Shown here: positions 10,492 to 56,105 of the stretch, piece by piece
Numbering within the stretch: the first letter of the stretch is position 1
Layout: every line of letters starts with the position of its first letter
Origin: Scyliorhinus canicula
Taxonomy: Eukaryota
Direction: 5' to 3'
Assembly: GCF_902713615.1 (NCBI RefSeq)
Contig: NC_052176.1
Coordinates: 2,976,001-3,040,000 of the forward strand
DNA: 64,000 nucleotides
Notes under the pieces: model-generated
Told to the model about the DNA's origin: nothing
The model's input: the letters and a program-made list of their open reading frames with translations, nothing else
Databases searched by the model: none
Program-made: the position numbers and the translations under genes

Positions 10492-10569
10492 CCTGTGTTT
10501 ATTATTAGCCATGATATTTGAAATGATTCGCAGTAATCAATTGGACACAGCAGTGTGTTTTCTTTACAG

Positions 10570-10717
10570 ATTATAGAGCACCTTATTATTCATATTAAAA
10601 ATGACAGCGGAAGATTGAGAAGATCGGCTGAGCTGGGAGGTGACCTGATTGTATTGGTTAATGCAGTGAACCCAACCTTACGCTTCCACAGGGAACGTCT
10701 CTTCTGTGTAGTAACAG
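10570..10717 (+). CDS. TOP6BL: TOP6BL exon 2 (IIEHLIIHIK...RLFCVVT)
   Basis: ttacag| and |gtagac; aligns with mammalian ILRFLIIHWK...LHCVTT. Confidence 0.9.
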
Positions 10718-11880: not shown

Positions 11881-12936
11881 AACCATAAATCAATAAATCT
11901 CATCCTTCCAAAACTTCCTTAGTTCCATGCCTGTCTACTTTACTTTTAACGCCCAGGTTTCGGTCGGTACGGATGTATAACTTGCCCACGGTGATTCTCC
12001 AACTTTCGTTCCTCTTCATAGAGAAATATTTTTCTCTTTGCAACAGTTGTAGTAGAATTGTAAATAGGTTTGCAAATTTTCTGCACCTTTTACAAAGAGA
12101 AAATCTCTGTCTCCCCCCCTCCAAATAGAAGCAATTGCCCATTGCTGTGTTTTAGGGGCTGGTTGAGCACAGTGGGCTAAACAGCTGCTTGTAATGCCAG
12201 AACAATGCCAGCAGCGCGGGTTCAATTCCTGTACCAGCCTCCCCGAACAGGCGCTGGAATGTGGCGACTAGGGGCTTTTCACAGCAACTTCATTGAAGCC
12301 TACTCGTGACAATAAGCGATTATTATTGTTCCCCAAAACAGGACAGAATAGATCAGTGATTCTTTATGGGAGGGCCGAGAGGCCTTACTCCTAGTCACTG
12401 TGTTGCTGAAACAGACTGATGATATTTACTCTCATTACTATTTTTAGTCAAGTGACACTTTTACGGGCGGCACGTCGGCACAGTGGGTTAACCCTGCTGC
12501 CTCACGGCGCCGAGGTCCCAGGCTTGATCCCGGCTCTGGGTCACTGTCGGTGTGGAGTTTGCACATTCTCCCCGTGTTTGCATGAGTTTCGTCCCCACAA
12601 CCCAAAGATGTGCAGGGTAGGCGGATTGGCCATTGTAAATTCCCCCTTAATTGGAAAAAATGAATTGGGTTCTCTAAATTTATTTTTAAAAAATTGACAC
12701 TTTTACAATTTTTCCAAAGCACACAATGTGGCAATACCAAAGTGGCATTCTACTGCTTTATCTTTCATGCATTGTTCCTCAGAATTACACCAACATATTT
12801 TATTTCTGACAACATTGCCCCTGCACTTCATTCAGACCGAAAACCCTTCCAGTTCCTAAAACTGTTGGGCCCGATAGAATCAAATTATTTCAATGGACTT
12901 CTGCTTGTTCCAGTAAACACTGATCTCTTCCATCAG

Positions 12937-13046
12937 TAATAGAAAAGCTCTTGCTCCAGCTCTCCTTAAGCGTGGTGCAAACGGATGTGGAGAACGCTGA
13001 TTTGAATGGGAAGATCAATTCTCCAGGGCTCAAGATGACGTTTGAG
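12937..13046 (+). CDS. TOP6BL: TOP6BL exon 4 (VIEKLL...LKMTFE)
   Basis: catcag| and |gtacga; phases consistent; ends MTFE like mammalian FQM(I/T)FE. Confidence 0.85.
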
Positions 13047-13285
13047 GTACGAACAGTGTAATCGGCCGCCACTAGATGCCAACAGCTATTTTTTAATTCC
13101 TTGAATTTGTCATGATTTGAGGAGGAGGAAGAGCGTAAGAGGGAAAGTAGCAAGATTTATTGATAGTCTCGTGTATGGGCTGAATATAAATGGATATATA
13201 CGTAAAATAAAGGCCCCAGATGAATGGCTCAGCTGGTTAATGCAATGAATAGCAAGAAGCAGCTGTATAGAACCTTAGACTATAC

Positions 13286-22482: not shown

Positions 22483-22675
22483 AGACTTTGCGTATGCAGA
22501 TGATTCACGTTGTTGCAGACTCCATCCTATTGCTGGGAAGCCTTTTCCTCTTTCTATTCCTGACAAACTCGCAGAAGATGGGGTGTGCGGAGTGCTTGAG
22601 ATATTATCAATCGCAGCCATTTGTCCTTGCCTGAAAAATTACCCCAACAAACCCACTAGAGTTTCAAACCTATCT
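22483..22675 (+). CDS. TOP6BL: TOP6BL exon 8 (RDFAY...CCRLHPIAGKP...AAICPC...RVSNLS)
   Basis: gagcag| acceptor; matches CSRIHPVLGHP...AAALCP...RISSVS; ends at U12 donor |GTATCCTT. Confidence 0.93.
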
Positions 22676-24406
22676 GTATCCTTCGTTGAAAGGTTAGACA
22701 ATACATGTAGATGTAAATAGGAAACAACAAGGAAATAATCATTTTTCATATAGTCACAAGTCGGCTTACATTAACACTGCAATGAAGTTACTGTGAAAAT
22801 CCCCTCGTCGCCACATTCCGGCGCCTGTTCGGGCACACAGGGGGATAATTCAGAATTCTCAGCTGGTCCGGGAATTGAGCCTCCGCTTCTGACCTTATTC
22901 CGCATCACAAACTAGCTGTCTAGCCCACTGAGCTAAACCAGCCCCTGCGAGGTGATTCTCTGCTGAAGTGCGTGTGAGCCTTGTGACATGCTTCCATTTT
23001 GTGTACCGTCCACCATATTGTTAAGATGGCTATGGGGGCAGGTATGATCAATCTGACTTTACGCCCGAGCACTGGGGAAGTGCGAATCAATGTCACTTTT
23101 CCTCAATCACTGACCAGACAGTCGCTTTGGCTGAATACCTTTGACAGCCTAGCACTTGAACTGTGTTTTCCTTGCGCGTTTCAATGAATATTTTTGTTTC
23201 GTTAGCTGGCACTGATTGGAAAGCATGTAAATGGGGTGCCACATTAGGATTAAAAATTAGGATTAAATGCTGTTTATTCACGGAATGTTGGTATTGTTGC
23301 CAAAGCCAGCATTTCTTGCGGGGGGGGTTCCGACCACGGGGGGTTCCTCCGATGTGGCCTGCCCCGCGGTCGGGACCCACCGATCAGCGGGCCGGCCTCT
23401 CTGTCTCCTGGCCTCCTTTCTACCGCGCTGGCGCCTGTACTCCTGCGGCATGTTGGGTCGAGGCCGGCGCGGACAAGGGAGACACCGCGCATGCGCAGAA
23501 ATCGCACCGGTGGGACTGCGCATGCGCGCATCCCCCGACGCATGGGAGGGGGTGGTGAAGTGGGAGCCTAGTTCGGGAGGCCGGCGGAAAACACCAAAGG
23601 GAGGGGAAGGGTAGGTAACCTTTGATGGGGAGGTGCCTCTAATGAGCTCAGTGGGTCCACGAAAGAAGTTCTCCCATTCCTGACATCAGCCCACGCGGGT
23701 AAAGTTGCCAGCTTTCCTGCATGTTCCAGCGCTGGTGGGGGCGAGGCCTTAAGTGGCCATTCATTGGCCTCTTAAGGGCCTCATTAAGCCCAAGGATGGG
23801 CAGGCTGCACGACAGTGGACCGCACGGTTGCACAAGTGATTAGCACTGTGGCTTCACAGCACCAAGGTCCCAGGTTCGATTCCCTGCTGGGTCACTGCCT
23901 GTGCAGAGTCTGCACGTTCTCCCTCGTGTCTGCGTGGGTTTCCTCCGGGTGCTCCGGTTTCTTCCCACAGTGCAAAGACGTGCAGGTTAGGTGGATTGGT
24001 CATCTTAGCGACCACAAAAAAGGTTAGGAGGGGTTATTGGGTTACGGGGATAGGGTGGAAGTGAGGGCTTACATGGGTCGGTGCCGACTCGATGGGCCAA
24101 ATGGCCTCCTTCTGCACTGTGTGTTCTATGTTCTAACACCTTCCCCATAAAGTTTTAGCTAGGTCATGGGCAGGCAAGTAGGTGGCTTGAGGGTCACCTG
24201 CTGGAATTTACATGCCCTCACGCCTTCAAACCCACCGGCAGAGGAGCGTGAGATCCAGCCTTATGAGTGAGATTTAGCCATTAGACCATGGAGTAGAGGT
24301 GGTGAAGGACTATGACATTTGGTATATCATTTTGGATCTTGCAAATAGTTTCTACTGGTCAATGATATCTGCAAACGATAAAACAGCAATCCTTGACTTG
24401 ACACAT
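22676..24406 (+). other. TOP6BL: U12-type (minor spliceosome) intron with GT-AT termini, TOP6BL intron 8
   Basis: 5' GTATCCTT; U12 branch box TCCTTGAC at 24390-24397; in-frame, homology-supported junction ...ACACAT|ATATTT. Confidence 0.8.
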
Positions 24407-24554
24407 ATATTTATATATGGACCATCTGACTTGCCTATATTGTTCAAGCACAGCAAAAATGCTTTGTCATTCTTCACGGATCCATCTCATCTAGCAGACT
24501 GGAAGCAATATGAACAATATCTGACCCAAAATCCAGACTTCAAGACAGTAGAAG
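24407..24554 (+). CDS. TOP6BL: TOP6BL exon 9 (IFIYGPSDLP...FFTDPSHLADWKQY...NPDFKTVE)
   Basis: Matches IFLYGPLGLP...FFKDTSSLVDWKKY...NLD. Both boundaries are non-canonical (AT| and |GA). Confidence 0.88.
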
Positions 24555-25529
24555 GAAAGTTTATATTTGTTTATCAAAACCTGATATCCTATGGTGGTTA
24601 AAGTACTGTTTATGTAAAGTTGTTGGGTTTTTTTGTCATTAAAACCGGCAATGTGGATAACATAGGTACAAAATACTTTCCTTCTTCCCGGGTCCACCAA
24701 AGCCTTGGGACATGGGCATACGTATAGACCTGAGAGCAGCACGGTGGCGCAGTGGGTTAGCCCTGCTGCCTCATGGCGCCGAGGTCCCAGGTTCGATCCC
24801 GGCTCTGGGTCACTGTCCGTGTGGAGTTTGCACATTCTCCCCGTGTCTGCGTGGGTTTCACCCCCCCACAACCCAAAGATGTGCAGAGTAAGTGGATTGG
24901 CCACGCTATATTTGCCCCTTAATTGGAAAAAATGAATTGGGTACCCTAAATTTAAAAATAAATAAATAAAATAAATATAGAACTGAAGCTACTCAGAGAA
25001 CCCTTTGAATAAGGATGATGGAGGTTTGCACACAGTAGTACTTACTGACAAAACAACCGCCTGGTCATTATATTTCACCATCTTTAATTATCTTCTATCC
25101 TATTTCCACACATTTCTCACCATTTCTAGACCCCCGAGGCGGTTTGCCCTGGCTAGGAAATGGCTTTAGGGGCACCCCCCAATCTTTCCTAAATGGCCAC
25201 TCATCAAATATACATTTACAGTGGATGTTGGGTTATCAACTCCGAGAGTGGTCCAAATTTGCGACGCGTCTTTCTCTGTGGGTAGAAACATGGGAGATCC
25301 TTCTCCTTCCTTGCCCCTGAGGAGAGAGGCTCGTTGAGGCACCTCAATTGTCACCAAAATCAACCAGGAATCAAGCTTGGGATCTGCCTGCTTTGTTATT
25401 CAACCAGCTAATAATGAGCGGAAGTTATAAGCTGAACGCATGCATCATGTCATCGCACCGAGGGTTTTAATGGTGACTAAGATGTTTTTTTCGGTCTTCG
25501 CTGACTGTTTTGCAAATGCAATTAACAGC

Positions 25530-25543
25530 CCACTAGGAGGCGC
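25530..25543 (+). promoter_or_regulatory. Candidate CTCF site
   Basis: CCACTAGGAGGCGC, close to the CTCF core consensus, in non-repeat intronic DNA. Confidence 0.45.
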
Positions 25544-26474
25544 TGTGAGTATGCAACACGAATAGTGGCCATTCAATGAGTTCCATTGATAGAAACGTCC
25601 AGTCAATCTGTTTGAGCTATAATTTGCAGTCTGATTATTTTTACTTTATGCAAGAAGTCCTTGAAATACCAGCCTCAGTTTGTCGAGACTGAAGTAATTT
25701 GCAGTGAAAATTACTCTCGGCTTAATTGTAATTACTGTAATTAGTATTAAAGCCACTACAGCTACGTACATGGCCTCATAATAGGTTACTTGTTCAGGTC
25801 TGTAATTAAGAATTTAAATTGCTCATTTTAAACAAAAATCACTGGTAATCCAACACAGACAAAACTTCCTGAACTGACAAGGAGTAAAAATACTGGGTTG
25901 GATTCTCCGCCTCACGACCCGGGAAATGTGTATTGCGATTGGGCGGAGTGCTAACCATTTCGCCACCGTGCCACCCAGACAGTCTGTCTTTTTTAAAAAT
26001 ATAAATTGAGAGTACCCAATTAATTTTTTCCAATTAAGGGGCAATTTAGCGTGACCGATCCCCCTACCCTGCAAATCTTTGGGTTGTGGGGGTGAAACCC
26101 ACGCAGACACGGGGAGAATGTGCAAACTCCACACCGACAGTGACCCAGGGCCGGGATCGAACCTGGGACCTCGGCGTCGTGAGGCAGCAGGGCTAACCCA
26201 CCGTGCTACCCTGATGTCTGTCTTTTAAACGCACCCCTTTTTATACTACTCCCAGGCTCCTGGTTGCTCACACTGCTGAGGGCTGCCTGTGTCCTTTAAA
26301 TGTTCAGAAGGCCTCTGGTCATCCGGGAGCCCACCCAGGCCGCCCTTCTGGCCGCCCTCATACCCCAGCTGTATCATCTAGGGGAAAACTCAATCAGGGG
26401 CCCACCAGGTGTTGGCCCTTCTCAGCGGCGCTGCCCCATTGCATATAAATGTTTCTGGAACATACCACTCCATT

Positions 26475-26509
26475 CACCTGAGGAAGGAGCAGTGCTCCGA
26501 AAGCTCGTG
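26475..26509 (+). ncRNA. Minimal hammerhead motif in a single Penelope-like arm (26471-26570)
   Basis: cac-CTGAGGA-A-GGAGC-agt-GCTCC-GAAA-GC-TC-gtg. Confidence 0.65.
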
Positions 26510-27115
26510 TTTGAAACAAACCTGTTGGACTTTAACCTGGTGTTGTCAGACTTCTTACTGTGCTCACCCGAACCAGAGGACACCTGTACCACAGCCTTGA
26601 GAACCACCTCCCTGGTTCCCTGCCCCCTCTCGGGTCAGAGGCCTCACCAGTGACCCCCAACCCCGCCGGATCCCCGGTTGTCTCCTCCTAGTGAGACTGG
26701 CAGTGCTGACTGCCTCTGCCACCACCTCTCAGGCAGTGTTCAGGACGGCAGGCTTGAGTCTGCATTAGCCCCGGCGAAGACGGTGTCCCTCCACTCCTCA
26801 CTGACATGGAGCTGTGGGTCCACCTCGGACTTCCCACCTCGCGGGGGGGGGGGGGGGGGGGGGGGCAGGTTTTCTGTGAGATGTCTTGATGGCTTCAGTG
26901 GGTGTGTGGTAAGTGGAACGCTTAAAAACCCTCCAGCTACCAGGTTCTTTAGCTCTAACTCTGGCCTTAGTGGTTAGAACGTCTGCTGGGCTGGGAACTG
27001 CTCTAAATTTGCGCCGGCAGAGTGCTAGCCCATTAGCATGACCCGAATCACTCCCCAAATAGCGCTCCTAATGGGAACGTGAACTGCACGCAATTCAGTC
27101 TCGGCATCAACACTT

Positions 27116-27786
27116 TGGCGCGATTCTCCGCTGCCCACGACGGGTCGGAGAATAGCGGGAAGGCCTTCCCGACAATTTTCACGGCCTCCTGCTATTCTCC
27201 CCCCCTCCGGCCGCCCCCCGACACGAATCGCTGCTCGCCGTTTTTTACGGAGAACAGCGATTCTCCGCAGGCCGATAGGCCGAATACCGCGGAGTTTACG
27301 GCCGTTTTCACGGCCGCGATCATACCTGCTTTCAGCGTTCGTGAAAACGGCCGCAAAGTGCCCGTCCCGGGCAACCATGGCACCGATTGGCACGGCCGCA
27401 CCGATCACGGGCAGCGGGTCCGATACCCGCGCACTATTTGTTCTTCCGCCGCCCCGCAGGATCAGTCCGCGGGGCGGCTGAGGGGCATGACGGCCCGTGC
27501 ATGCGCGGGTTTGACGCGTCTGCGTGATGACGTCATGCGCGGGTTGGAGCCACCCATCCCGCGCATGCGCGGATTACGTCATTGTGCGCGTCAGCCGCTG
27601 TGACTCTTGGCGGGCGGAGTTAGCGACGTTCGCTAACTCCGCGTCACCGTGATTCCCTGGGCCCCGATACTAGCCCCGCCCGGGGGGGAGAATCGGGTCC
27701 CGGGACGGAGCTCCGAGGCTGGCGTGAAACACGGCCAGTTTCATGCCAGCCTTCACGGCACGCCGGATTTGCGGAGAATCGCGCCC
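27116..27786. mobile_element. GC-rich MITE (PIF/Harbinger-like, non-autonomous)
   Basis: TIR GGCGCGATTCTCCGC / GCGGAGAATCGCGCC. Confidence 0.78.
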
Positions 27787-29207
27787 TTAGTCTCCCAAAC
27801 GGAGAATCCTGCCCACTGTCTACTGACTCGAAAGAAAATAACCTTTTCAAATTTCAGGGAGAACAAAGAACAAAGAAAAGTACAGCACAGGAACAGGCCC
27901 TTCGGCCCTCCAAGCCAGTGCCGACCATGCTGCCCGTCTAAACTAAAATCTTCGACACTTCCTGGGTCCGTATCCTGGGTCTGGAGACAATGGCTCGTGG
28001 TAATGTCACAAGACTAGTAATCATAAGGGTCAGGCTAAATGCTCCGGGGAAACGGGTTCAAATAAAATCAGGCATGAAAAGCTACTCTCAGGAATGGTGA
28101 CCATGAACCTATCTTCGATTGTTGCAAAACCCCATCTGGCTCACGAATGTCCTTTAGGGAAGGAAATCTGCCGTCCTTACCTGGCCTGGCCTACCTGTGA
28201 CTCCAGACACGTAGTAATGTGAAATAGCCTAGCAAGCCACTCAGTTCAAGGACAGTTAATAATAATCATTATTATTGTCACAAGTCGGCTTACATTAACA
28301 CTGCAATGCAGTTACTGTGAAAAGCCCCTCGTCGCCACATTCCGGCGCCTGTTCGGGTTCACGGAGGGAGAATTCAGAATGTCCAATTCACCCAACAAGC
28401 ACGTCTTTCGGGATTTGTGGGAGGAAACCGGAGCGCCCGGAGGAAACCCACGCAGACATGAGGGGGAGAACGTGCAGACTCCGCACAGGCAGTGACCCAA
28501 GCCGGGAATCGAACCTGGGACCCTGGTGCTGTGAAGCAACAGTGCAGCAAATCCTTTCCAGCGATGCCCATGATGAAATTACTAAAATACCTTGGCTGTT
28601 TAGCACAGGGCTAAGTCGCTGGCTTTGAAAGCACACCAAGCAGGTCAGCAGCACGGTTCGATTCCCGTAACAGCCTCCCCTGGACAGGCGCCGGAATGTG
28701 GCGACTAGGGGCTTTTCACAGTAACTTCATTGAAGCCTACTCGTGACAATAAGCTATTTCCATTTTCATTTCCTTTGAGAGATTTTCACCTCGAATGCTC
28801 AGTGCATTAATAACTCTTAAATGAACAGGCAAGGGAGCATCAGTATGATTTTCAACCTAAAAGTCACGATTATCTCAACATTTTAGACTCCATGGCCTGA
28901 ATTTTACGTTCGGGCGGGAACGGATGTTAAACCTGATCCTGCCCGAGATCACGTTGTTGAGGCGATATTACGCTGGCTGGCCAATTAATGGCCATCCAGC
29001 ATGAAATGCGCTCTATGAAAGGCTGAGCACTGCCGGGGAAAGTGGGAGGAGGGTGGGCGCTAGGAGAAGGGAGCTGGCACTTCCAACGTGCTCTGTTGGG
29101 ACGGCAGCCGTTGCAGAGTTGTCTGAGGGAGCTGCTGACTTGCTTAAAAAAAGAAATACCAGTGGAAAAACTATGCGACGAGTGTCCGTGTCGTACAGTA
29201 CACAGAC

Positions 29208-29793
29208 TGTCATGGGAGAAAGGCTTTTGTCTTATCGCATGGCTTCAGTGATGTCATTGTGTGGGTGGAGCTGGGCTGTGGCTCAGTGAGCTGTTTTACT
29301 TTCACTTTTGATTTGGCTGCTGTGGACTCGGGCAGGAGAAAGAAGTGTTTTGGCCTGTCTCTCTCTGTTTTCATTTTAAATAATCTGGTCCAGTTAAAAA
29401 TCACCTCGGTGGTGGTTTTCGATTTAGTTTGCTTTCCGGCAGGGTTTAATCCTGCTGGTGAGACTGGGTCAGAATCTCAGGGAAAGTCAGTCTTATTCAG
29501 GTGAGAATGCGGAGTGCTGGGCCACGCCCTTGAAAAGGTGGTTTATGGGATTTTGTTTTTGAATTGGAACAGTTAAGGGGGAATTCATTAAGTGTTATAC
29601 ATAGATTACTGTAGCTGTGTGGGGTCTTTATGTTTGTAATTGATAAAGATTCTGCTGTTAAATCTTACTAAGTTCTTGAGCTTATTTTGATTAAAGTGTC
29701 TGGGAAGACTGTTGAATCGCACCTGAAGGGAAGACTTTTGTGCTCATCGTAGCCAAATTCAACAAAAAGTTACAGGACAGGTGACCCATAACA
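29208..29793 (+). mobile_element. Solo LTR, 4-bp-TSD family
   Basis: TGTCATG...CATAACA; TSD AGAC; homologous to the 36611 and 60175 copies. Confidence 0.8.
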
Positions 29794-30880
29794 AGACCTT
29801 CATCCCCAGACCCACTTGTTAATATTATTTGGGCTTTGACTTGCATCCCACCCCGGACTGAGGTTGCAACTGAAACATAAAGACCGCCTTGCCAATCGGC
29901 CCACCCGCCAACCATATAGGCGACGTAACTCCTAGTCAATTGCTGCTTAATTCATTTAAGGGCGGCACGGTGGCGCAGTGGGTTAGCCCTGCAGTCTCAC
30001 GGCGCTGAGGTCCCAGGTTCGATCCCGGCTCTGGCTCACTGTCCGTGTGGAGTTTGCACGTTCTCCCCGTGTTTGCGTGGGTCTCACCCCCACAACCCAA
30101 AGGTGTGCAGGGTAGGTGGATTGGCCAGGCTGAATTGTCCCTTAATTGGGAAAAAATGAATTGGGTACTCTAAATTAATATAATTTTTTAAAAATCATTT
30201 AATTCATCCCGAGGTCGTGAAAGTCACTAAATAAATGCAAGTCTTTAAAAATGTATTGTGATGAAATGTTATGCTGGCTGCACTTGTTGTATGCACTTGT
30301 TTACTGTGACTCGATGAGCTGCATATATATGTAAACTGTTGCTGGAATAGCCTGCCCCAAAAGTGATTTCCTGATGGCCCACTGGGTAACTTTGTCAGAT
30401 GTGTGGTGCTAAGCTACAGGATGGAAGGCCCCGGATTCAACACCAGACCAAAAATTGGTCCCGGCGCCCTTGGTCAATGAACGGGAACATTCAGCCACTC
30501 CTAATCCCTACGCAGTTAGTGTACGCTGGAATGTGTCAGTTTAGTGAGGACAGGTGTGATGCATGGCATGAACATAGAACATACCGTGCAGAAGGAGGCC
30601 ATTCGGCCCATCGAGTCTGCACCGATCCACTTAAGCCCGCACTTTCACCCTAACCCAATAACCCCTCCTAACCTTTTTGGACACGAAGGGACAATTTAAT
30701 GCAGTCAATCCACCTAACCTGCACGTCTTTGGACTGTGGGAGGAAACCGGAGCACCCGGAGGAAACCCACACAGACACGGGGGGGGGGGGGGGGGGGGAG
30801 AACGCACAGACAGTGAAGCAGCGGGGAATCAAATCTGGGACCCTGGCGCTGTGAAGCCCCGTGCTAGACCGGGTGCTACC

Positions 30881-31358
30881 TGTCTTGTTATGCTCTTGAC
30901 GTAGCATAAACTGCTTCCTTGATGTTCACCCTGACAAAGGAAGGTTCAGACGTGGAGATAACTTCAACACGTTTATTGAACTATTTACAATTCTCCTACT
31001 CGGGTCCGCCACTACTGTTAATCCTTCTATAGCTACTCAGACTGACGAACCAGTCTGCTACAATCCATGTGGTGGGTGTGATGTTGAATCAACCCTGTGT
31101 CTGTACTCACTGACTGTCTCCACTGGAAAGAGGAAGATCATGTGTGCTGTGTCCTTTATATATGGGTTGGTGTAATGCCCCCCCTGTGGTAGTGTCACCT
31201 CTGTGTGTATCGTGAATGCTCATTGGTCGTGTCCTATCTTACTGTCCTATTGGTTGAGTGTCTGTGTGTCATGTCTCTGGTGCTCCCTCTAGTGTCTAGC
31301 TAGTCTACGTGTATTTACATTAACCCCTTGTGTATCTACAGTGATGCATATCACCACA
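30881..31358 (-). mobile_element. Solo LTR (478 bp) inserted in an HE1 SINE
   Basis: TG...CA; 5-bp TSD CTACC. Confidence 0.85.
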
Positions 31359-31433
31359 CTACCGTGCTGCCCAATTGATAAATTTAGGTGAAAAAAAGAT
31401 ATGGTTAAGATTGTGCTGCTGTGGTCCCCTCAG

Positions 31434-31770
31434 ATGCGGGCAGGTTGTTTCCACTGGCGGGTGAAAGCAGAACTAGGGGACATAGCCTCAAAATACGGGG
31501 AAGTAGATTTAGGACTGAGTTTAGGAGGAACTTCTTCACCCAAAGGGTTGTGAATCTATGGAATTCCTTGCCCAGTGAAGCAGTTGAGGCTCCTTCATTA
31601 CATGTTTTTAAGGTAAAGATAGATAGTTTTTTGAAGAATAAAGGGATTAAGGGTTATGGTGTTCGGGCCGGAAAGTGGAGCTGAGTCCACAAAAGATCAG
31701 CCATGATCTCATTGAATGGCGGAGCAGGCTCGAGGGGCCAGATGGCCTACTCCTGCTCCTAGTTCTTATG
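31434..31770 (+). mobile_element. CR1 LINE 3' end
   Basis: TRGHSLK...RRNFFTQRVVNLWNSLP plus 3' UTR. Confidence 0.85.
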
Positions 31771-31889
31771 TGACACACTGGAGGGTTCGTGTCCCCACAG
31801 GAATTGCACCTCTGCCGGATAATAAGGAAAGAAATGGGAAAACAAGTTTTAAAAGCCAGTTCCACCGTATACGTATGTGTTTGTTACAG

Positions 31890-32033
31890 GATTGGCCTGC
31901 CCAGATATCAGTTACATTCTTCGATCAACCCTGGAGGATGTCTGCTCCGAACGCGGTGAAACCCAGACACTGCTTCTTTTTCTCTTCATTAAATACTGGG
32001 ATGACTTTCACTTGGAGCTGGTGGACATGGCAG
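31890..32033 (+). CDS. TOP6BL: TOP6BL exon 10 (GLACPDISY...QTLLLFLFIKY...DMA)
   Basis: ttacag| and |gtactt; matches LVLPDVSY...QTLLLFLFVDF. Confidence 0.93.
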
Positions 32034-39124: not shown

Positions 39125-39737
39125 GTTTGTGACTGTATCCTAGTTTATTTTCATAGAAATTCTTTTTTTTTTTGACCGACTAAGCGTCTGCTAAACGTGA
39201 AAGCCCATCGCCATATTTATGCGACTGGACTGGTGAGCCACTCACGTCGCCTGTCCAAATCCCCTTCAAGCTTCCTTGCATCCCCCTCGCAACTTACATT
39301 CCCACCTGGGTTTTGGGCCGTCAGCAAATTTGAAGATATTACATTTGGTCCCTGCATTCAAAATCATGTATGTACATTGTAAAGAGCTGTGGTCACAGCA
39401 CTGATACCTGCCGGTTTAGCTCGGTGGGCTGGACAGCCGGTTTGTGATGCAGAGCGAGGCCAGCTTCGCAGATTCCCGTACTGGCTGAGGTTATTCATGA
39501 AGGACCCCCACCCCGGCCTTCTCAACCTTGCCCCCCGCCTGAGGTGCGGTGACCCCCCGGTTAAATCACCACCAGTCAGCGCTCCCTGTCAAAGGGCAAA
39601 ACAGCCTATGGCCATTTGGGACAACGGTGGCACGCTAGCACAGAGGTTAGCATTGTGGTTAGCACTGTTGCTTCACAGCTCCAGGGTCCCGGGTTCGATT
39701 CCCGGCTTGGGTCACTGTCTGTGCGGAGACTGCACGT

Positions 39738-54015: not shown

Positions 54016-55480
54016 CACTCCCAACCTTTTCAGCTGGGGCACGTTGCCAGAATTAGGACACTGATTTTCTCTCCTTATATTTCCACCAGTGACCAATACG
54101 GACATCGTTCCCTCTCTGAGATTTGGCATTGTTATCATTCTGTTTGGTTGAGCACGAGACCCACAGCTTATCTTTTTTCAGCAATGGACAAATATGAATT
54201 GGGGAGGGCAAGGCTATCCCATTGCCCCTCAAGCAGCCGGAAGTGCTACGTAAGGACTGTAGGGTCTGGTGAATATCAATGGTGCGTTATGTGTACTTTC
54301 AAATTCTTCCCCTGGGGATGGTGAGGCGATAAAGCGACTGTAGTGTGGGTGTGGGAATGGAGGTGAAATGAAAGTTGCCACAGTCCGCAAACACTGCTCT
54401 CCCCTTTTGAGAGAGAGCTCATTGGTGGGCAGCATGGTAGCACAAATGGATAGCACTGTGGCTCCACAGCGCCAGGGTCCCAGGTTCGATTCCCCGCTGG
54501 GTCACTGTCTGTGCGGAGTCTGCACGTTCTCCCCCCGTGTCTGCGTGGGTTTCCTCCGGGTGCTCCAGTTTCCTCCCACAGTCCAAAGACGTGCAGGTTA
54601 GGTGGATTGGCCGTGCTAAATTGTCCTTCGTGTCCAAAAAGGTTAGGAGAGGTTATTGGGTTACGGGGATAGGGGGGAAGTGAGGGCTTAAGTGGGTCAG
54701 TGCCGACTCGATGGGCCGAATGGCCGCCTCCTGCACTGTATGTTCCATGTTCTAAACTGAGGGTCACCACATCTCGGGCGTGGGGCAAGGTGGAGAAGGC
54801 GGAGCCTTGATGAATAACCTGAGCCGGTACGGGGATTGAACCCGCGCTGTTGACGTAGCTCTGCTTCACAAACCAGCCGTTCAGCCAACTGACCCCCCCA
54901 CTGGGAGACGAGAGCGGTTGACCAGCAGGTTTGGAATCCATTTCAAATCCGTATTCCAGTCAAACGAAGTTGGGAAGGGCAACCTGAAGACATGGGTTGA
55001 ATTTTCCATCTGTGCGCCCACCGCCCTCAACTCGCAGTTCTCCTCCACCTCTTGTCGACCCTTCAACTGTCTCTTGTGTTGTCGGCCTGCTTGTCTGACC
55101 CACTGTCCTGGAAAGGTCATCATTTTCTTCAGTTAATTCTGATGACGCAACCGCCTCCTTCCTCCAATTGGGCAGAGAATGGTGGTCATCAGTCCCCAGA
55201 GGCTCGGAGAGAGAGAGAGACAGAGACACTGCCTGATTGTAGGTTTGCAGGTACCAACTATAGCGCACTACTGAGGGACTGCGGCACTGTTGGAGACCCC
55301 GTCTTCAGATAAGATGTTGTGCTACTTCCCTGCCTCCCCACCCCACCTTTGAGATGGGACTTGAGAGATCATGTCTTTGACTAATTACAACGTGTCTCCA
55401 ATGTCAAGTGCTCCACACAAATCTTGTCTGTCTGAAAGAATTGCTCTTTTTCTTTTGTTTTGTGTGTGTGTGTATAACAG

Positions 55481-55583
55481 GGATCATCCCACTGTGATTA
55501 AACGGCGGTTCACCAGTGTCCTGATCGTCTCGATGCTATCCCCATTGTGGCTCTGGACATGGCGACAATACACGGGTTTCAAG
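55481..55583 (+). CDS. RCE1: RCE1 exon 2 ([18 protein letters not shown]...TGFK)
   Basis: Matches [18 protein letters not shown]; canonical AG/GT, phases consistent. Confidence 0.96.
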
Positions 55584-56105
55584 GTACGTCAGTACGTTCG
55601 TCAACCAACTGCGGCACCAGGTTGCTGTGATGGGGGGTGAATTTTGCCTGGTGGAGCAGATTCCTATTAAGACGCCTCCAATTCTGGCCTCTTGACCGTA
55701 CATGATTTGCGTCCCTGCGTTATTGGCAGCCATGGTAGCACAAGCGGGTAGCACTGTTGCTTCACAGCGCCAGGGTCCCAGGTTCGATTCCCGGCTTGGG
55801 TCACTGTCTGTGCGGAGTCTGCACGGTCTCCCCATGTCTGCGTGGGTTTCCTCCGGGTGCTCCGGTTTCCTCCCACAGTCCAAGCACGTCCAGGTTAGGT
55901 GGATTGGCCGTGATAAATTGCCCTTAGTGGCCAAAAAGGTTAGGAGGGGTTATTGGGTTATGGGGATAGGGTGGAAGTGAGGGCTTAAGTGGGTCTGTGC
56001 AGACTCGATGTGATGGGCCGAATGGCCTCCTTCTGCACTGCATGTTCTATGTTCATGCCTTCAGCATCCAGGGCCTTAAACTCTGACAAAGAGTCATCCA
56101 GACTC

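What the first reader, a model, noticed from the sequence alone, without database searches (positions are those of the whole stretch)
24548..31891. Apparent GA-AG intron on the other side of the same exon
Seen: exon 10 (ttacag|GA TTG) needs a phase-1 donor. The nearby GTs are phase 0 (24548) and phase 2 (24559). The phase-1 position reads AAG|GAAAGT, the ideal AAG|GTAAGT with only +2 changed, and using it gives NPDFKTVEGLACPD, gap-free against NLDLNLDRDLVLPD. Inference: either a genuine, very rare GA donor, a splice-disrupting allele, or a base error. If genuine, exon 9 (148 nt, frameshifting if skipped) is bracketed by two non-canonical sites, a possible splicing bottleneck restricting TOPOVIBL.
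Basis: partly seen in the sequence, partly recalled or inferred. Interest (0 to 1): 0.75.

Follow-up and report, generated by a model that had tools for sequence, protein, structure and literature searches.

The report
Working GA-start intron in catshark TOP6BL
In the catshark's meiotic gene TOP6BL one intron really begins with GA instead of the near-universal GT, is shared with a sister species and is used in the annotated protein: a rare but already known kind of splice site, not an error.

Summary
Exon 9 (24407-24554) ends AAG|GAAAGT. The nearby GTs (24548, 24559) are out of frame, and the acceptor is ttacag|GATTGG (31890).

The NCBI protein XP_038643297.1 (Scyliorhinus canicula) maps 100% onto the window and reads ...NPDFKTVEGLACPD.... 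Every junction has a GT-AG placement except two: the U12-type GT-AT intron 22676-24406, which this scan noted before (s1-240151), and this one. Here the only plausible placement is GA-AG.

Sturgeon and a bat split the same codon in the same phase with ordinary GT, so A at +2 is a derived change.

Exact 31-mers covering base 24556 (A) occur in runs from seven catshark samples (six studies) and eight samples of a second species. That argues against a base error or a private allele. The exon is single-copy. NCBI's S. torazame models break exactly at this intron.

RNA support is therefore indirect: the RefSeq model and the k-mer shares.

Best reading (about 0.8): a genuine U2-type GA-AG intron, compensated by otherwise perfect U1 pairing, like FGFR1-3 and ITPR1. 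It is a new member of a known kind. The "splicing bottleneck" idea is untested.

The parts
22483..22675 (+). It ends ...AAT CTG TCT.
   Evidence: Exact mapping of XP_038643297.1 (P0123) to the window.
22676..24406 (+). Upstream intron 8, U12-type, GT...AT ends, 5' site GTATCCTT.
   Evidence: the only placements are GT-AT or TG-CA. One search finds GTATCCTT at 22676. Earlier finding s1-240151.
24407..24554 (+). Exon 9, 148 nt, encoding IFIYGPSDLP...NPDFKTVE plus the first base of a Gly codon.
   Evidence: Homologous exons in sturgeon and bat.
24548..24549 (+). Out-of-frame canonical GT, 7 nt upstream of the GA donor (ACA|GTAGAA, phase 0).
   Evidence: Compare the FGFR GA site, which depends on a GT 6 nt upstream (PMC4176328).
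24552..24560 (+). Non-canonical 5' splice site AAG|GAAAGT. Cleavage is inferred after 24554. A at +2 is base 24556. GT at +5/+6 is 24559-24560.
   Evidence: The A allele is present in many runs.
24555..31889 (+). Intron 9, 7335 nt, with GA...AG ends.
   Evidence: the junction required by the RefSeq protein has no canonical placement.
24594..24602 (+). Two weak in-frame (phase 1) canonical GT donors, TATG|GTGGTT and GGTG|GTTAAA, just before or overlapping the in-frame stop at 24599-24601.
   Evidence: Not used in the RefSeq protein.
31862..31889 (+). 3' end of intron 9: pyrimidine-rich tract and AG (CCACCGTATACGTATGTGTTTGTTACAG). No U12 branch-site motif.
31890..32033 (+). Exon 10, 144 nt, starting GA TTG GCC (…G-LACPDISYILRS…) and ending CAG|GTACTT.

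Best explanation
Intron 9 of the single-copy TOP6BL (TOPOVIBL, PF15091) gene of the small-spotted catshark is a genuine major-spliceosome (U2-type) intron. Its 5' end is GA instead of GT (AAG|GAAAGT ... TTACAG|GA).

Shown here:
- The A at +2 is real DNA. It is present in many catshark samples and in a second species.
- The annotated RefSeq protein requires this junction.
- Sturgeon and a bat have a canonical GT at exactly this codon and phase, so T to A at +2 is a derived change in the catshark lineage.

Inferred mechanism:
- U1 snRNA still pairs with -2, -1, +1 and +3 to +6, which is every core position except -3 and +2. That compensates for the lost +2 U, as in the reporter site CAG|GAAAGTAT and the FGFR /GA sites.
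- Cleavage occurs after G24554, and the normal AG acceptor is used.
- Efficiency is probably lower than for a GT site and depends on enhancers.
- The flanking GTs (24548 and the +5 GT at 24559) may be used occasionally. Either would shift the frame.
For: Sequence.

RefSeq model: XP_038643297.1 (P0123, found, sequence, accession) carries PF15091 at 249.7 bits. It maps exon by exon at 100% identity. A GT-AG placement exists at every junction except 22676-24406 (GT-AT) and 24555-31889 (GA-AG or four shifted equivalents).

Orthologues: sturgeon has GAAG|GTGATC ... CTGCAG|GT in phase 1 within the same Gly codon. The bat Miniopterus has AGAG|GTATAT ... CTCTAG|AT in phase 1 at the same place. Both GT sites match the consensus less well at +3 to +6 than the catshark site does.

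The A allele: in the 61-nt query 24526-24586 every 31-mer covers 24556. Both sampled words are held by organism A samples S1, S22, S2, S4, S6, S7 and S17 (six studies) and by eight organism C samples (two studies).

RNA-like runs: ten such runs, including one of a third species label, hold 0.35 of the words of 24350-24700. That is what a 148-nt exon (plus the shared GA) predicts: 12 of 34 words seen, 12.7 expected. One of these runs, X15, holds none of the exon-intron boundary words.

S. torazame: the RefSeq models break exactly here. XP_072345472.1 reads through to ...TVEGKFIFVYQNLISYGG-stop, and XP_072345763.1 starts at ...GLACPD. An older model (GCB64347.1) skips exon 9. That is what gene finders do when no GT is available.

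Copy number: the exon is single-copy in the 4.2-Gb assembly.

Literature: GA-AG introns are validated in FGFR1-3 and ITPR1 (PMC4176328). CAG|GAAAGTAT is usable when enhancers are present (PMC6280755).
Against: - No RNA read or contig across the junction was seen.
- The basis of the RefSeq model is not visible here. That Gnomon accepts non-consensus introns only with transcript support is my own knowledge, not something tested here.
- The 'RNA?' labels of the runs are guesses, and the k-mer shares resolve the exon end only to about +/-9 nt.
- Three RNA-like runs (X8, X10, X25) do hold the exon-intron boundary words. This could mean retained intron, use of a downstream donor, or DNA.
- The identity of organism C is coded, and only two words were sampled.
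- In published reporter tests GA ranks low (GC > TT > AT > GA > GG > CT).
Confidence: 0.8

Rival explanations
1. The productive mRNA uses one of the weak in-frame canonical donors downstream (TATG|GTGGTT at 24594 or GGTG|GTTAAA at 24597). This adds 13-14 residues (GKFIFVYQNLISY...). On this reading the GA junction in RefSeq is a homology-driven modelling choice, or only one of two isoforms.
For: - The frame stays open to 24598.
- Both GTs are phase 1.
- Run X10 holds 0.47 of the words (16 of 34), about what an exon ending near 24593-24596 predicts. It also holds the boundary words.
- The 15 read-through residues are identical in S. torazame.
Against: - The RefSeq protein lacks the insertion.
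- Sturgeon and bat align without a gap to the GA junction.
- Ten RNA-like runs hold only the 0.35 share expected for the 148-nt exon.
- Both GT sites mismatch U1 at two or three of positions +3 to +6.
- If a usable GT existed, NCBI's S. torazame model would have spliced rather than run to the stop.
- Identity over 15 residues is not significant at about 92% background identity.
Confidence: 0.08
2. Base-call error, or a rare splice-disrupting allele carried by the reference animal.
For: A single T-to-A change at +2 of an otherwise perfect donor is what a sequencing error or a null allele would look like.
Against: - Exact 31-mers covering A24556 are held by contigs from seven samples in six studies of organism A, and by eight samples in two studies of organism C.
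- S. torazame gene models fail at the same intron.
Confidence: 0.02
3. The transcript uses the GT at 24548 or 24559 together with an unannotated phase-correcting micro-exon or another acceptor.
For: - Both GTs lie within the +/-9 nt that the k-mer shares allow.
- S. torazame XP_072345763.1 begins MHG-LACPD. Those residues cannot lie directly upstream of an AG acceptor, so they imply some exon inside intron 9 spliced to exon 10 in phase 1.
- The only ATGCAYG in the catshark intron is at 30559.
Against: - No AG-preceded acceptor restores the frame for either GT.
- The RefSeq protein has no extra residues.
- The alignment to sturgeon and bat is gap-free.
- The 30559 site is followed by GC, not GT.
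Confidence: 0.03
4. TOP6BL is decaying in Scyliorhinus and the broken donor is one of its lesions.
For: - Two non-canonical sites flank one exon.
- Annotation pipelines repeatedly fail on the gene.
Against: - All mapped coding exons are open, and all other junctions are canonical in S. canicula.
- The S. torazame proteins are also open and 82-94% identical exon by exon.
- The gene is single-copy.
- In mammals it is required for meiotic breaks (established knowledge).
- The U12 GT-AT intron is itself an accepted type (s1-240151).
Confidence: 0.03

Closest known systems
The /GA 5' splice site of human FGFR1, FGFR2 and FGFR3 (Twigg 1998; Brackenridge 2003, as cited in PMC4176328)
   Same: A U2-type intron with G at +1, A at +2 and a normal AG acceptor. 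It is conserved between species, and a canonical GT lies a few bases upstream (6 nt in FGFR, 7 nt here).
   Different: In FGFR the GA site is an alternative donor that competes with that GT and gives in-frame isoforms. Here GA is the only frame-keeping donor, so it must serve constitutively, and the neighbouring GT would shift the frame. Dependence on the GT and on intronic elements is untested here.
Human ITPR1 GA-AG intron (Parada et al. 2014, PMC4176328)
   Same: A validated GA-AG junction that mappers and annotators misplace. The catshark and S. torazame gene models show the same kind of trouble.
   Different: A different gene and lineage. The ITPR1 junction was proven by RT-PCR, whereas this one rests on an annotated protein and k-mer evidence.
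Reporter site CAG|GAAAGTAT (Erkelenz et al. 2018, PMC6280755)
   Same: The same intronic hexamer GAAAGT, with full U1 pairing apart from +2. It shows that such a site can be spliced, and that the GT at +5/+6 can also be cut.
   Different: The reporter was an artificial context that depended strictly on SRSF7/TIA1 enhancers. No enhancers were identified here.
Genome-wide GA donors of Eurytemora affinis and Oikopleura dioica (PMC5714493, PMC7072748)
   Same: The AG|GA-A context around the GA donor.
   Different: In those species GA is common across the genome, and a variant U1 has been proposed. In the catshark 91 U1 5' ends are canonical. The single compensating variant is not an intact U1.
GC-AG introns
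   Same: A +2 substitution tolerated because the remaining positions match the U1 consensus unusually well.
   Different: GC is roughly a hundred times commoner and far more efficient than GA.

Membership tests
U2-type GA-AG intron | Genomic intron starts GA and ends AG, and the bases are real | tested here: met
   31-mers covering A24556 occur in many runs and two species labels.
U2-type GA-AG intron | Mature mRNA joins the flanking exons exactly at that site | tested here: inconclusive
   RefSeq protein XP_038643297.1 requires it, and the k-mer shares fit it.
U2-type GA-AG intron | U1/U2-like consensus at the other positions, with a pyrimidine tract and AG at the 3' end | tested here: met
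   AAG|GAAAGT matches at -2, -1, +1 and +3 to +6. The 3' end is TGTGTTTGTTACAG.
U2-type GA-AG intron | Conserved in related species | tested here: met
   A second species label holds the exact words, and the S. torazame models break here. Sturgeon and bat have GT.
FGFR-type 'parasitic' GA site | Use depends on a nearby canonical GT and on downstream intronic elements | not testable with these tools
   GT is present 7 nt upstream and at +5. Dependence needs a minigene.
U12-type (minor) intron | RTATCCTT at the 5' end and a TCCTTAAC-like branch site 10-15 nt (at most about 25 nt) before the 3' end | tested here: not met
   The donor is GAAAGT. An ATATCCTA motif at 24584 is phase 0, cannot give the frame, and occurs at chance frequency. 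There is no branch-site motif before 31889.
TOPOVIBL / TOP6BL (Pfam PF15091, DUF4554) | Protein matches the family model above its cut-off | tested here: met
   P0123 scores 249.7 bits against a cut-off of 27. The exons align to opossum, human, armadillo, bat and sturgeon TOP6BL.
Null allele or pseudogene | Lesion private to the reference, or accompanied by other disabling changes | tested here: not met

The most novel reading that the evidence does not exclude
The GA donor, together with the U12-type GT-AT intron on the other side of the same 148-nt frameshifting exon, is a conserved double checkpoint in catsharks. Both steps are slow and enhancer-dependent. Productive TOP6BL mRNA would then be made only where the right splicing factors are abundant (meiotic cells), with exon skipping, the +5/-7 GTs or intron retention giving non-productive RNA elsewhere. 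The optimal flanks of the GA site would be a compensatory adaptation that followed the T-to-A change.
Probability: 0.12. Interest if true: 0.6.

Novelty: new member of a known kind. Interest (0 to 1): 0.35.

Why it matters
- It adds a natural, apparently constitutive GA-AG intron in an essential single-copy meiotic gene to a very short list of credible vertebrate cases (FGFR1-3, ITPR1).
- It shows the ancestral state (GT in sturgeon and bat) and the compensated derived state side by side.
- It explains why gene finders split or mis-model TOP6BL in catsharks. NCBI's S. torazame annotation has two half-genes, and an older model skips the exon.
- An exon flanked by a U12 GT-AT intron and a GA donor is a convenient natural substrate for asking how exon definition works when both neighbours are weak.
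- It does not change what is known about how splicing works.

Tried and rejected
- **Exon 9 against the representative library.** Only opossum, a sturgeon fragment and a spurious 3058-aa repeat protein (P0001) came back.
- **Opossum TOP6BL as query.** The list was filled by mammals.
- **Exon 9 ORF as query.** Blank, because of the length window.
- **Alignment with a real scaffold (A1).** In a local simulation it ranked sharks below mammals. I used an unrelated long first row instead (A5), and that found the two catshark species.
- **S. torazame DNA.** The S. canicula record is left out of the look-up of encoding contigs.
- **Compensating U1 snRNA.** 91 U1 5' ends are canonical. The single ATACTTTCCTG copy has no Rfam U1 match. 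Rejected.
- **U12-like ATATCCTA at 24584.** Wrong phase, and at chance frequency in the window: 6 found, 5.3 expected. Rejected as the donor.
- **Alternative acceptors.** CCAG|TT at 31860 and CCCAG|AT at 31905 keep the same phase, so they do not rescue either GT.
- **RNA editing.** A-to-I at +2 would give GG, not GU.
- **EMBO J 2003 FGFR paper (PMC152907).** Not held, so its content is cited only through PMC4176328 and PMC7072748.
Full report
**What is in the sequence**

- The open frame ...AAT CCA GAC TTC AAG ACA GTA GAA G runs into GAAAGT at 24555.
- GT at 24548 is phase 0 and GT at 24559 is phase 2.
- The acceptor is TGTGTTTGTTACAG|GATTGG, with exon 10 starting at 31890.
- Joining 24554 to 31890 gives NPDFKTVE-G-LACPDISY.

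- The letters AGGA stand at both ends of the intron. The same mRNA is therefore compatible with five intron placements (AG-AC, GG-CA, GA-AG, AA-GG, AA-GA), none of them canonical.
- The frame stays open for 15 more codons, with two weak phase-1 GTs at 24594 and 24597 just before or overlapping the stop at 24599.

**Which gene**

- tblastn of mammalian TOP6BL proteins places a series of exons in the window.
- A search built on catshark exon peptides found XP_038643297.1 of Scyliorhinus canicula (P0123). It carries Pfam PF15091 at 249.7 bits.
- It maps to the window exon by exon at 100% identity, so the window is S. canicula TOP6BL.
- The exon is single-copy in the 4.2-Gb assembly.

**What the annotated protein requires**

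I enumerated every junction placement that reproduces P0123 exactly.
- Nine of its eleven junctions have a GT-AG placement.
- The two exceptions flank the same 148-nt exon.
  - 22676-24406 can only be GT-AT (or TG-CA) and starts GTATCCTT. This is the U12-type intron already treated by this scan (s1-240151).
  - 24555-31889 has only the five placements listed above.
- The protein is not labelled low-quality and needs no inserted or deleted base.

To my knowledge NCBI's Gnomon keeps non-consensus introns only when transcripts support them. I could not check that here.

The same pipeline did not join the exons in S. torazame:
- XP_072345472.1 runs through the donor to ...TVEGKFIFVYQNLISYGG-stop.
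- XP_072345763.1 starts at ...GLACPD.
- The older GCB64347.1 skips exon 9.

This shows that protein homology alone does not create the junction. It also suggests that S. torazame offers no GT there either.

**Is the A real?**

Instead I queried the run index with the 61 bases 24526-24586, in which every possible 31-mer covers base 24556.
- Both sampled words are held by contigs of organism A from samples S1, S22, S2, S4, S6, S7 and S17 (six studies).
- They are also held by eight samples (two studies) of a second species label, organism C.

A base error or a private allele is therefore very unlikely, and the GA is shared by a relative. Caveats: only two words were sampled, the names are coded, and presence of A does not exclude a T allele.

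**Indirect RNA evidence**

In one search, ten runs guessed to be RNA hold 0.35 of the 34 sampled words of 24350-24700. They come from five studies, and one is of a third species label.
- An exon 24407-24554 plus the two shared bases predicts 12.7 words, and 12 were seen.
- An exon ending at 24583-24596 predicts about 16-17.
- An exon starting at the AG at 24348/49 predicts about 19.
- One of these runs (X15) holds none of the boundary words.
- X8, X10 and X25 do hold them. These three may contain pre-mRNA, a longer isoform or DNA.

This resolves the exon end only to about +/-9 nt.

**Orthologues**

- The sturgeon locus L001 (Acipenser sinensis, MGH0186632.1) has CTG GAA G|GTGATC and CTGCAG|GT GCA GCC TGT CCT GAT. 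That is the same Gly codon, split in phase 1, with a canonical GT.
- The bat locus L002 has GAT AGA G|GTATAT and CTCTAG|AT ATG GTG, again phase 1 at the homologous place.

The intron position is therefore ancient, and A at +2 is derived. In both GT species positions +3 to +6 match the consensus poorly. In the catshark they are all optimal (AAGT), as expected if the other positions compensate for the lost +2 U. With three species this is only an anecdote.

**Mechanism**

The donor is not U12-like, and there is no U12 branch motif before 31889. An ATATCCTA at 24584 is in the wrong phase and at chance frequency.

A compensating U1 was sought. 91 U1 5' ends in the genome are canonical ATACTTACCTG. 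The single ATACTTTCCTG copy is not an intact U1.

The most likely mechanism is ordinary U1/U6 recognition of a site that pairs at every core position except -3 and +2.

The literature supports this:
- GA-AG introns are validated in FGFR1-3 and ITPR1. The FGFR site depends on a GT 6 nt upstream (PMC4176328).
- CAG|GAAAGTAT is spliced in reporters when enhancers are present, sometimes also at the +5 GT. GA ranks below GC, TT and AT (PMC6280755).
- GA donors with an AG|GA-A context abound in Eurytemora and Oikopleura (PMC7072748; PMC5714493).

The catshark site has a GT 7 nt upstream and one at +5. Either would shift the frame.

**Verdict**

- Error or allele is essentially excluded.
- A downstream in-frame GT isoform (0.08), a micro-exon (0.03) and gene decay (0.03) remain minor rivals.

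This is a new member of a known, rare kind of intron, implicitly present in RefSeq but not described. It sits next to a U12 GT-AT intron. The 'bottleneck' idea is attractive but untested.

Noticed in passing
window 10567-10716 and 12891-13049: The N-terminal residues of S. torazame XP_072345472.1 (MESAVRQIIEHLIIHIKNDS...) map here at 90% and 70% identity. The S. canicula RefSeq protein starts only at MTFEMSEDS (16262), so that model looks 5'-truncated by at least two coding exons.
   Followed up: partly
window 24584-24591 and 39135-39142: U12-type 5'-site-like motifs sit just inside two introns: ATATCCTA 29 nt after the GA donor, and GTATCCTA 11 nt after the donor at 39125. The window-wide count is at chance (6 found, 5.3 expected), so they are probably meaningless. 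Their placement beside donors is still curious.
   Followed up: partly
S. torazame XP_072345763.1 (P0125); window 30559: This half-gene model begins MHG-LACPD. MH cannot lie directly upstream of an AG acceptor, so some exon inside intron 9 appears to be spliced to exon 10 in phase 1. Its start lies 6316 nt after the end of the other half-gene. In S. canicula the only ATGCAYG in the intron is at 30559, followed by GC.
   Followed up: partly
S. torazame XP_072345472.1 (P0124), exon 8/9 junction: It reads ...RVSNVY-IFIYG where S. canicula has ...RVSNLS-IFIYG. The Y suggests that the U12 GT-AT junction was shifted by the annotation pipeline in S. torazame.
   Followed up: no
L001 11162-11341 (Acipenser sinensis MGH0186632.1): The deposited 83-aa sturgeon protein is a fragment that reads through the canonical donor into the intron (…LLEGDLNSSGSK). 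It is flagged UNVERIFIED_CONTAM. The locus nevertheless holds a normal-looking TOP6BL, with an AT-AC U12 intron (CAC|ATATCCTTT) where the catshark has GT-AT.
   Followed up: partly
G000 C13 about 18.7-29.6 Mb (L004-L033): Large tandem arrays of U1 snRNA genes, with at least 80 of the 91 canonical 5' ends on one chromosome. One block repeats at about 900-bp spacing around 28.53-28.56 Mb. The catshark U1 differs from the human sequence I recalled after position 18.
   Followed up: no
P0001 (3058 aa, source unknown): A giant repeat protein (DLTQLVRAKPADxPKLLL units) matched the exon 9 peptide at E = 9e-16 through repeated weak hits. This is a false lead, worth remembering when short exon peptides are searched.
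   Followed up: no
L002 43981-44771 (bat): An Rce1-like gene starts 210 bp after TOP6BL in the bat. Several mammalian RefSeq entries fuse the two genes (PF15091 + PF02517). The catshark ORF at window 55371-55640 gave no Pfam hit, so synteny there is unverified.
   Followed up: partly
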